From Phallusia mammillata (lineage: Eukaryota): a stretch of 64,000 nt of DNA. Shown in pieces: positions 37,604-40,600 of this stretch. The stretch lies in the NCBI GenBank assembly GCA_965637545.1, contig OZ281494.1, forward strand, positions 11,346,001 through 11,410,000, in the 5' to 3' direction. The number at the start of each line of letters is the position of its first letter. Position 1 is the first letter of the stretch. The position numbers were made by a program, and so were the translations under genes. The notes beneath the pieces are model-generated. The model saw nothing but the letters and a program-made list of their open reading frames with translations, did not search any database and was not told where the DNA came from.

Positions 37604-40600
37604 ATGGAGCACACAATGGGAGGCAAGACAAAAATGCCAAAAATTGCAAAGGTATGGTATGTAGTATGTACATTACATGCAGCACATTTGATAGGTGATA
37701 TGACTAAAAAAGTTTCATTTAAATATAGTTCAAGTAATTGTGTCATATGTGTTGTTTTTGTCTTTTTTAACTTAATAATCTACAAAAGTAGTATAAAAGG
37801 TAATTTGTACAGCCCCAAATTGTGCAAAACTTATTCTTTTATTTGTGTTTTTTAGGTCAACAACAAAGCACCTGCCCCTGTTCAAATCACAGCCGAACAG
37901 CTTTTGCGTGAAGCGAAAGAACGTGAATTGGAACTTTTACCCCCAGTAAATATGTTATGTGTAGTATTGTGATTGTGATTTTTTTTTTCCTTTTCATATC
38001 ATATCAAGGCAAATGCTTCCCTTAATGTTACAACTGCACTGCTTTTGTAAAACACTATCACGATTCTGTTACACAATTATGAGCGGAACTGATGTTAGTC
38101 CAACAGCATTTGTGTTTAAGTTAAATGTTGTTGTCATTTCTTGTCTTTCTTCAGCCACCTAAACGAAAAATAACTGATCCACAAGAACTAGAGGAATACA
38201 AGTTGAAGAAAAGAAAGGTAACAAAAAGAAATCATTTAAAAGTACACCTTAAAACTCATGTACATTTAACATGTTTAGGGTTTTGAAGACCTGTTAAGAA
38301 AAAACAAATCCTCCATTCAAAACTGGATTAAATATGCAGCGTTTGAAGATAGCATGAAGGAAATTCAAAGGTCTGTTATATGTTTCTATTTTTTTGTGAA
38401 ATAATTAAATTTTTTGAGTAATTTGTTAGCAGCCATTTTAGTGGCATTTACAAGAATTTTGGCAAAATAATGCTTGAATTTATGTTGATTTTATGTTAGA
38501 GTTATCACATTGCAACCGACTGCAAAATTTTCTTCCAAAGGTCTGTTTTTTTTTCCTTTTTTCTTAAGGATAAGGATTTTTTTCAGCAACCATTTAGTTG
38601 AGTTTAAAATATATCACAAAACTAGGATTGATTTATGGTAAATATATTACATTGCAACCGACTGCAAAATTTTCTTTATAGAGCTCGTTCTGTGTATGAA
38701 AGAGGAATTGATGTGGCACATCGGTGCATACCCCTCTGGTTGAAGTATGCAGAAATGGAAATGAGAAACAAACAAATAAACCATGCTAGAAACATCTGGG
38801 ATCGTGCTGTTACTATCCTGCCAAGAGCTAATCAATTCTGGTAGGGTGGTGTTTAAAATTTGTATACATCAAAAAATTGTCACCAATCTCATTACATACA
38901 ATTCTTTCATAAAAAAACAATTAACATATTTATCCAACCACACACAGATATTTAAGTTATTTGAGAGACATCATCATATGATTTTAGTTGTTGATGGGCA
39001 AATGTGGTATACAGATACCAAAAAACTTATCTGGATTAGATTGGTGATCTGGATTAACCTATGTCAATTACTTCTGCATCACAAACTATTTGTACCTCTA
39101 GTTTTGTCCTAATTAGGTGAAGATCCGGATTGTCTGAATTCGGTTTAACAGAGATTAACTGTATATATGTAAAGATTTCTTTCATAAAAGTAATACACTT
39201 TTACAAAACATCAATTTTTAACTGCAATGCCAAAACCGTTACTGACTAATTTAATTGTCAAAAACTGTTCAAGGCACCTTCTTACTCAAGATTTTTACAT
39301 CTAAGCTTGGGAAACCAAGAATAAATGTAAGAAAAGTGTTGAGAATTTTCTTGTATTCAGGTACAAGTATGCATATATGGAGGAGATGGTTGGAAACGTG
39401 GCTGGATGCCGGCAAGTGTTCGAACGTTGGATGGAGTGGGAACCTGATGAGCAAGCCTGGCATTCCTACATTAACTTTGAATTGAGATACAAGGAAGTTG
39501 AGAGGGCTAGACAAGTCCATGAAAAATATATCCTTTAACACCTCACATTGATTTGTGTTAGTTACTGGGTGTACACTGACTAGTTACCAAGCTATGCTAT
39601 TAACCAAATTTTTCATGATAAACTAAGGGTTCACAATCCCTGTGCAAAAAAGCAACTAAGTACCAATTTATGGGAAAGCGCTCAACAGAAATAATCTGTG
39701 TTACAATTGTTTAATGTGTTAATTTACTGTTTGAACTCTAACTAAGTTGGGATGTTAGTTCCTTGACCATTATGTTCACTTGTCTATATTCATCCTGATA
39801 TTAAAAACTGGGTGAAATATGCTCGGTTTGAGGAGCGGTTTGGATACATAATTAAAGGACGACAGGTTTTCGAAAGAGCTGTGGAATTTTATGGAGAAGA
39901 CCACATGGAACCAAATCTGTTCGTCAACTTTGCAAGATTTGAAGAAAGACAAAAAGAGGTAACTTTCCAAACATGTGCATGACTGTAATGCGTAACTGCA
40001 CAACATAAACACATAACAAAAGGAGAGGTAGAGTCAAGCAAGCAACCAAATATTCTTCCTGGCTAAAATACCAAACTTTGACATATTACTTGGTTATTCA
40101 TGTCTAACGCTTCTTTCCATCCCTGCATTGTTGTGCTTGATTATAATCGGTTGAGCATTTAAAAAGGTTGGCTCATTGCTTACCACCAATCTGCATGATG
40201 CCACACAACTTTTTGTCACAGATTTCAAACAAATTGCGCCCAAATTTGTTTTTAACGGCTTTACAACTTGTATTCCGAATGCTTGTTGATAATAAAAGGG
40301 CACAACACTTCTTTTCTGGGGATTTCCCATCTTTCATAAATTGTCCTAATTCGCGAGATTTTCAGCGTGTATTTTAAAACTACCATGATTTCTCTTAATT
40401 CGTGATATTTCCAGGGCAATTTTTAAAAACTATTTAATCACGCCCAGAAGGTGGAATTGAACCACTCTGACGCTAATCAGCTACAGGTTTGAAGCCTGCA
40501 CCCCAGACCACTGAGGATCATCTAGGCACAAATACTAATTCGCGCTCGATATATATAACACTCCACAGCCAGTCAACTTACGTTTGTGGTGACTGTGCGC

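What the first reader, a model, noticed from the sequence alone, without database searches (positions are those of the whole stretch)
38371..38681. CRNKL1 intron 4 is two tandem introns separated by a zero-length exon (AG|GT)
Seen: copy 1 (38371-38540) and copy 2 (38541-38681) both start GTCTGTT and share an identical 28-mer ACATTGCAACCGACTGCAAAATTTTCTT just before their AG. The internal junction CAAAG|GTCTGTT is identical to the real exon-4 donor, so removing copy 1 regenerates the same 5' splice site. The middles have diverged while the 3' ends have not. Inference: a recursive-splicing ratchet point made by intron duplication in a small intron, within a gene for a core splicing factor.
Basis: partly seen in the sequence, partly recalled or inferred. 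Interest (0 to 1): 0.7.

Follow-up and report, generated by a model that had tools for sequence, protein, structure and literature searches.

The report
Duplicated intron with internal splice junction
A small intron in a sea-squirt splicing-factor gene was doubled in tandem, which left a complete extra pair of splice sites back-to-back in its middle; it could therefore be removed in one step or two with the same result, but whether the two-step route is used could not be tested here.

Summary
The 311-nt intron between two crooked-neck/CRNKL1 exons (38371-38681) consists of a 170-nt and a 141-nt unit. Both start with the same 12 bases that span the exon-4 donor (CAAAG|GTCTGTT). Both carry an identical 28-mer 5-6 nt before their AG. 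Neither the 28-mer nor the intron occurs anywhere else in the 240-Mb genome, and the gene is single-copy, so this is a local tandem duplication and not a mobile element. The duplication began 5 nt inside exon 4 and ended 5 nt before the acceptor.

Between the identical blocks the copies are about 76% identical with many indels, so divergence is uneven (permutation P about 3e-4). Every legal pairing of the four splice sites leads to the same exon4-exon5 junction. A half left unspliced gives an early stop codon.

The internal acceptor is AAG, whereas the 12 other mapped acceptors of the gene are YAG. Perfect 28/28 identity is more than splicing signals need, so gene conversion is a live alternative. 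The structure and its origin are supported. Recursive splicing is plausible but unproven. An adaptive "ratchet" is unlikely.

The parts
38279..38370 (+).
   Evidence: Open frame [30 protein letters not shown](R); boundaries.
38366..38377 (+). Donor 1: 12-mer CAAAG|GTCTGTT (exon-intron junction)
   Evidence: exact copy at 38536-38547.
38371..38540 (+). Unit 1 (170 nt): GT...AG, with its own candidate branch point, pyrimidine tract and AAG acceptor
38507..38534 (+). 28-mer copy 1. Contains a candidate branch point CCGAC (A at 38519, 21 nt before the AG) and the start of the pyrimidine run
   Evidence: exact; 2 copies in the window; only 2 copies in the genome at up to 3 mismatches. The branch-point assignment is inference from the sequence.
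38536..38547 (+). Internal junction: acceptor 1 (AG 38539-38540) abutting donor 2 (GT 38541-38542). This is the zero-length exon and also the duplication joint. Base 38535 (C) matches neither parent, both of which have T
38541..38681 (+). Unit 2 (141 nt): GT...TATAG, the acceptor used for exon 5
38649..38676 (+). 28-mer copy 2 (candidate branch A at 38661, 20 nt before the AG)
38682..38840 (+). Next CRNKL1 exon ((R)[53 protein letters not shown])
   Evidence: 80-96% identical to fragments carrying HAT_Syf1_CNRKL1 Pfam domains, some named 'crooked neck' by JGI.

Best explanation
Shown: the intron carries a tandem DNA duplication of about 150-170 bp. Its left edge lay 5 nt inside the upstream exon and its right edge 5 nt before the 3' splice site. 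Both parents have T at the joint, which suggests a T/TT microhomology followed by a later T-to-C change at 38535. The duplication placed a second complete set of splice signals in the middle of an ancient intron: candidate branch point, pyrimidine tract, AG, and directly after it the same 5' splice site with the same 5 exon-derived bases.

Follows from the sequence: every legal pairing gives the same mRNA. This holds for donor 1 to acceptor 2 in one step. It holds for donor 1 to acceptor 1 followed by re-splicing from the regenerated donor to acceptor 2. It also holds for donor 2 to acceptor 2 followed by donor 1 to acceptor 1. The duplication was therefore harmless at birth and could be fixed neutrally.

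Inferred: the internal acceptor is transcribed first, lies only 170 nt from the donor, and shares the 28-mer that holds the candidate branch point and most of the pyrimidine tract with the real acceptor. A fraction of transcripts is therefore probably removed in two steps, as two tandem introns around a zero-length exon. Once that happens, losing the internal donor or acceptor would strand half an intron carrying a stop codon. This would keep both internal signals under selection. I read this as a neutral lock-in, not an adaptive ratchet.
For: Architecture and exact repeats. Unique in the genome, so local and not mobile: 28-mer, 2 hits at up to 3 mismatches; the whole intron hits only itself. 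Single-copy gene. Not an assembly artefact: the copies differ by 24 substitutions and 32 gap columns. Ends conserved beyond the background: run of 28 with P = 3e-4; Fisher 40/0 against 75/24, P = 1.4e-4. The intron position and phase are old, shared by contigs of other animals (L004, L005, L007-L009), so an existing intron was doubled and no new intron was gained. Stranded halves are unproductive: the frame from exon 4 into unit 1 stops at 38402, and the frame across the internal junction into unit 2 stops at 38599 (open frames listed). Precedent for zero-length exons in small introns: C. neoformans BOT1, 375 nt split into 210 + 165 (10.1101/224170), and the 336-nt intron of S. pombe SPNCRNA.445 (10.1101/226894). 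In human introns under 1 kb recursive lariats exist but are the minority, stochastic route (PMC10156609). The architecture is rare: this is the only such site in the window on either strand, and 200 kb of further sequence yielded only a ~195-nt satellite.
Against: The internal acceptor has A at -3 (AAG), while the 12 other mapped acceptors of the gene are YAG, so it may compete poorly. Its -5/-6 bases are CC, not the TT found at 196 of 197 fly ratchet points (10.1101/006163). Perfect identity over 28 nt, and retention of a non-consensus donor (GTCTGT) unchanged in both copies, is more than selection for splicing would produce. This points to gene conversion, a templated patch, or birth by unequal exchange between divergent haplotypes. 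The middles are not significantly similar on their own, so the age of the duplication is uncertain. No close relative was available to test conservation of the internal site.
Confidence: 0.5

Rival explanations
1. Inert relic. The intron is removed essentially always in one step, from donor 1 to acceptor 2. The internal AG|GT is ignored or used at noise level. The identical end blocks come from short-tract gene conversion between the neighbouring copies, or from a duplication by unequal exchange between two already divergent haplotypes whose splice-signal ends were alike.
For: The AAG internal acceptor contrasts with 12 of 12 YAG acceptors elsewhere in the gene. 28/28 identity exceeds what degenerate splice signals need, and orthologous acceptors share nothing beyond YAG. 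In human introns under 1 kb conventional lariats outnumber recursive ones (PMC10156609).
Against: The internal acceptor shares the 28-mer holding the candidate branch point and most of the pyrimidine tract with the real acceptor. It also emerges first and is nearer the donor, so complete silence would be surprising. Conversion tracts confined to about 30 nt and 12 nt, exactly at the two splice-signal ends and inside flanks that differ by about 25% plus indels, would be an odd coincidence.
Confidence: 0.33
2. Regulatory unproductive splicing. The internal sites are kept because they yield a controlled fraction of transcripts with a retained half-intron, or with a small cassette such as 38500-38540. 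These transcripts carry premature stops and are degraded, so the splicing factor can tune its own level.
For: Both half-retention products hit stops quickly. 38500-38540 is flanked by TTAG| and |GTCTGT, is 41 nt long and so shifts the frame. Alternative splicing coupled to nonsense-mediated decay is reported for a splicing factor even in S. pombe (prp10; 10.1101/226894). This would give the 28-mer a sequence-specific role that fits its perfect identity.
Against: Purely inferential: no RNA data and no conservation data. The 28-mer is absent from the same intron in the other animals sampled and from JGI metagenome contigs.
Confidence: 0.1
3. Mobile element (introner or MITE) inserted next to or inside the intron, or an assembly artefact that falsely doubled the intron.
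For: Conserved ends with variable middles are typical of non-autonomous transposons.
Against: The 28-mer and the whole intron occur only at this locus in 240 Mb. There are no terminal inverted repeats. The joint contains exon-derived bases, as expected for a local duplication. An artefactual doubling would give identical copies, not 24 substitutions and 32 gap columns.
Confidence: 0.03

Closest known systems
Zero-nucleotide-exon ratchet points of Drosophila long introns (Duff et al.; bioRxiv 10.1101/006163)
   Same: A 3' splice site sits directly against a 5' splice site inside an intron. Ligation of the upstream exon regenerates a donor, and the final mRNA is unchanged.
   Different: Fly sites lie in introns of 11-133 kb and remove segments of at least 2.6 kb. 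They have TT at -5/-6 in 196 of 197 cases and are conserved between species. Here the intron is 311 nt, -5/-6 is CC, the acceptor is AAG, and use and conservation are unknown. The fly paper as read here gives no origin for its sites by duplication of the host intron.
Recursive splicing of small fungal introns: C. neoformans BOT1 (375 nt = 210 + 165; 10.1101/224170) and S. pombe SPNCRNA.445 (336 nt; 10.1101/226894)
   Same: [quoted passage not shown]
   Different: Those cases were demonstrated by spliceosome-bound intermediates, junctions and branches. Neither description, as read here, mentions that the two halves are copies of each other. The present case is in an animal and rests on sequence only.
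Intron gain by tandem genomic duplication of an AGGT-containing segment (Rogers model; PMC3265369, PMC4974935, PMC2891723)
   Same: A local tandem duplication duplicates splice signals, and the result is spliced back to the original mRNA, which makes the event harmless.
   Different: In that model exonic sequence is duplicated and a new intron appears at a new position. Here the duplicated segment is almost entirely an existing, ancient intron. No new intron position arises; the intron is lengthened or doubled.
Spliceosomal twin introns (stwintrons) of fungi (PMC8469720)
   Same: A complex intervening sequence that can need two consecutive splicing reactions.
   Different: In a stwintron the internal intron interrupts a splice signal of the outer intron, so the order of removal is obligatory. 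Here the outer donor and acceptor are intact, the units lie side by side and are not nested, and one-step removal remains possible.

Membership tests
Recursive splice site / zero-length exon | AG directly followed by GT inside an intron, preceded by a pyrimidine tract and a plausible branch point | tested here: met
   ..CCGAC..(21 nt)..TTTTCTTCC AAAG|GTCTGTT at 38519-38547. This is a sequence-level test only.
Recursive splice site / zero-length exon | Ligation of the upstream exon to the site regenerates a functional 5' splice site | tested here: met
   the junction after step 1 would be identical to the original donor from -5 to +7.
Recursive splice site / zero-length exon | Exon-to-site junction reads and separate lariats for each segment | not testable with these tools
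Recursive splice site / zero-length exon | Conservation of the site in related species | tested here: inconclusive
   Only distant relatives were reachable (L004, L005, L007-L009). They share the intron position, but their introns cannot be aligned and the 28-mer is absent. L004 and L005 also break off inside the intron.
Drosophila-type ratchet point | Host intron over 11 kb and TT at -5/-6 of the internal acceptor | tested here: not met
   The intron is 311 nt and -5/-6 is CC, against the figures in 10.1101/006163.
Intron gain by tandem duplication (Rogers model) | Tandem direct repeat whose unit carries an AG|GT, with the joint explained by the two parental edges | tested here: met
   units 38366-38535 and 38536-38676. 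The joint consists of the intron's -6 region followed by the last 5 nt of the exon.
Intron gain by tandem duplication (Rogers model) | A new intron appears at a position that lacks one in relatives | tested here: not met
   The same intron position and phase is present in L004, L005 and L007-L009.
Introner / transposon-derived intron | Many similar copies in the genome, with terminal repeats or target-site duplications | tested here: not met
   only this locus; no terminal inverted repeats.
Stwintron | The internal intron interrupts the donor, branch point or acceptor of the outer intron | tested here: not met
   the outer donor (38371) and outer acceptor (38681), with its branch region, are uninterrupted.
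CRNKL1 / crooked neck / Clf1 (host gene) | HAT-repeat protein with the Syf1/CRNKL1 type of repeats; single orthologue | tested here: met
   Exon-level only. The exon 5 ORF hits fragments with PF23233/PF23231/PF02184, some named 'crooked neck'. 15 collinear exon pieces were found in the window. Single copy in the genome.

The most novel reading that the evidence does not exclude
The internal AG|GT is a constitutively used zero-length exon in a 311-nt animal intron, born by tandem duplication of the intron itself. It is then locked in, because each internal signal becomes indispensable once the other is used. The perfectly kept 28-mer would be a specific cis element required at both acceptors. 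This would be a datable, mechanistically transparent birth of a recursive splice site, in a gene for a core spliceosome protein.
Probability: 0.12. Interest if true: 0.65.

Novelty: new variant of a known kind. Interest (0 to 1): 0.4.

Why it matters
Several hundred recursive splice sites are known, but how they arise is largely unexplored, and in animals they have been studied mainly in very long introns. This locus shows one simple route. A tandem duplication that spans an exon-intron edge creates a complete acceptor-donor pair inside the intron and cannot damage the mRNA, whichever sites the spliceosome pairs. If the internal site is used, this would be a compact natural system of 311 nt in a single-copy essential gene. 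It could be used to measure competition between one-step and two-step removal and to test whether mutual dependence of the internal signals preserves them. If the site is not used, it is a neat but ordinary intronic duplication.

Tried and rejected
1. Mobile element or introner: rejected. The 28-mer and the intron are unique in the genome.
2. Known RNA family in or around the intron: only chance-level matches far below the gathering scores.
3. RNA structure that loops out the internal site or bridges the outer sites: the fold is no better than shuffles (z = -0.01).
4. Paralogue or haplotig for comparison: none.
5. Orthologous introns. The word search with the exon 5 ORF, two contig look-ups and a metagenome scan gave contigs with the same intron position but unalignable introns. 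L007-L009 are 96% identical in protein but GC-rich and clearly from another animal. A shared 9-mer (CTTCCAAAG) in L004 is at chance level by my estimate of about 0.5 expected.
6. Exact 22-mer scan of the JGI metagenomes: 0 hits.
It held nothing comparable except a satellite.
9. A first related-loci query with the 30-aa exon was too short; I resent it with the 52-aa exon.
10. The exons were searched one at a time by reference.

Full report
**What is there.**
The window carries a crooked-neck/CRNKL1 gene on the + strand from about 37.55 to 46.3 kb. I mapped it exon by exon from open frames and GT/AG boundaries. Gene identity rests on exon-level matches. The exon 5 ORF is 80-96% identical to fragments that carry HAT_Syf1_CNRKL1 domains, and JGI names some of them 'crooked neck'. 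The genome holds one copy. Earlier notes of this scan call the genome an ascidian, and one names Phallusia mammillata. I did not verify the name.

- Exon 4 (38279-38370) ends CAAAG and the intron begins GTCTGTT.
- The same 12-mer recurs at 38536-38547, so an AG abuts a GT at 38540|38541.
- A 28-mer occurs at 38507-38534 and again at 38649-38676 with no mismatch. No shuffle of the window gives even one match at up to 3 mismatches.
- Exon 5 starts at 38682 and restores the frame (..[12 protein letters not shown]..).
- The two units are 170 nt and 141 nt long.

**Origin.**
- Neither the 28-mer (at up to 3 mismatches) nor the whole intron occurs anywhere else in the 240-Mb assembly.
- There are no terminal inverted repeats, no Rfam family and no unusual RNA fold (z = -0.01).
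- The internal joint reads: intron 3' region up to position -6, one C, then the last five bases of exon 4, then the intron start. This is the signature of a tandem DNA duplication whose left edge lay 5 nt inside the exon and whose right edge lay 5 nt before the acceptor.
- At the one base that matches neither parent (38535, C) both parents have T. A T/TT microhomology joint followed by a T-to-C change is therefore the simplest history. This step is inference.
- Reverse splicing of the excised intron would have left TATAG|GT at the joint, not CAAAG|GT.
- An assembly artefact would have produced identical copies.
- The intron position and phase are old. Contigs from other animals (L004, L005, L007-L009) have an intron at exactly this codon position. 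One metatranscriptome-like contig (L010) reads straight through. An existing intron was therefore doubled, and no new intron was gained.

**Uneven divergence.**
- In a global alignment the 12-mer and the 28-mer are perfect.
- The 131 columns between them hold 75 matches, 24 mismatches and 32 gap columns.
- A run of 28 matches arises in 0.03% of permutations. Fisher's test for 40/0 against 75/24 gives P = 1.4e-4.
- The roughly 30 columns just upstream of the 28-mer are clearly homologous but hold 13 non-matching columns, so the event is not very recent.
- On their own the middles are not significantly similar. The duplication is therefore either old, or the middles were reshaped by indels.

**What the architecture implies.**
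With two donors (D1 at 38371, D2 at 38541) and two acceptors (A1 at 38540, A2 at 38681) there are three routes:
- D1-A2 removes everything at once.
- D1-A1 removes unit 1 and rebuilds an identical donor, from which unit 2 is removed.
- D2-A2 removes unit 2 and leaves unit 1 with its own donor and its own AG now abutting exon 5, from which unit 1 is removed.

All three routes end in the same exon4-exon5 junction.

A stranded half is unproductive. The frame from exon 4 runs into a stop at 38402 in unit 1. The frame across the internal junction stops at 38599 in unit 2 (open frames). The duplication was therefore harmless when it arose. Once the internal sites are used at all, each becomes necessary for the other. 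That dependence could explain why they are kept.

**How likely the internal site is to be used.**
For use:
- A1 shares with A2 the 28-mer that holds the candidate branch point and most of the pyrimidine tract.
- A1 is the first AG downstream of that branch point.
- A1 is transcribed first and lies 170 nt from D1, in a gene whose introns range from 61 to about 1030 nt.

Against use:
- A1 is AAG, whereas the 12 other mapped acceptors of the gene are CAG or TAG.
- Its -5/-6 bases are CC, not the TT of fly ratchet points (10.1101/006163).
- In human introns under 1 kb recursive lariats are the minority, stochastic route (PMC10156609).

I put detectable two-step removal at about even odds. I think an adaptive 'ratchet' function is unlikely.

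**A caution on the conservation argument.**
Selection for splicing alone does not demand 28 identical bases, nor an unchanged non-consensus donor (GTCTGT) in both copies. Orthologous functional acceptors in other animals share nothing upstream of YAG. Short-tract gene conversion is a real alternative. So is birth by unequal exchange between divergent haplotypes. So is a sequence-specific role of the 28-mer, for example in unproductive splicing of this splicing-factor gene. I could not separate these alternatives.

**Limits.**
Later searches used references to the window only.
- No close relative was reachable. An exact 22-mer scan of the metagenomes was blank.
- A scan for the same architecture found only this site in the window. 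In a further 200 kb it found only a ~195-nt satellite.

**Comparison with what is known.**
- Zero-length-exon recursion is established in long fly introns (10.1101/006163).
- It is also established in two small fungal introns: C. neoformans BOT1, 375 nt as 210 + 165 (10.1101/224170), and S. pombe SPNCRNA.445, 336 nt (10.1101/226894).
- Tandem duplication is an accepted way to create splice-competent sequence (PMC3265369, PMC4974935, PMC2891723).
- A candidate recursive site made by doubling the host intron itself did not turn up in my literature searches. I class it as a new variant of a known kind, and its function is unproven.

Noticed in passing
window 38500-38540: A 41-nt segment flanked by TTAG| upstream and |GTCTGT downstream contains 28-mer copy 1. 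If it were spliced in as a cassette it would shift the frame, making it a possible poison exon. This is purely a sequence observation.
   Followed up: no
window 38636-38643: ATG|GTAAAT inside unit 2 resembles a good donor (intron 2 of the same gene uses GTAAAT). The homologous place in unit 1 reads ATGTTAGAG.
   Followed up: no
window 38371-38377 / 38514-38520 (and 38541-38547 / 38656-38662): The donor GUCUGUU can pair with AACCGAC in the 28-mer (6 of 7 pairs, central U-C mismatch). This is donor to branch-region complementarity within each unit. It is too short to be significant on its own.
   Followed up: no
window 41546, 44754 and 38371: Three of the 13 mapped CRNKL1 donors begin GTC (GTCAGT twice, GTCTGT once), an unusual +3 base for animal introns.
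   Followed up: partly
L101 (G000:C1:11180001-11190000), about 1000-2100: A tandem array with a period of about 195 nt whose units contain ACGAG|GTAAAAC-like junctions. It is a satellite or minisatellite picked up by my scan and is not a two-copy intron.
   Followed up: no
L004 161-170: The orthologous intron of a related (tunicate-like) metagenome contig contains CTTCCAAAG, the same 9-mer as the window's internal acceptor, but it is followed by CG, not GT. By my estimate this is at chance level.
   Followed up: partly
L007-L009 (JGI metagenome contigs): An animal with GC-rich coding sequence has a CRNKL1 exon 96% identical in protein to the window's exon 5 and an intron at the same position. 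This shows how slowly this protein segment evolves.
   Followed up: no
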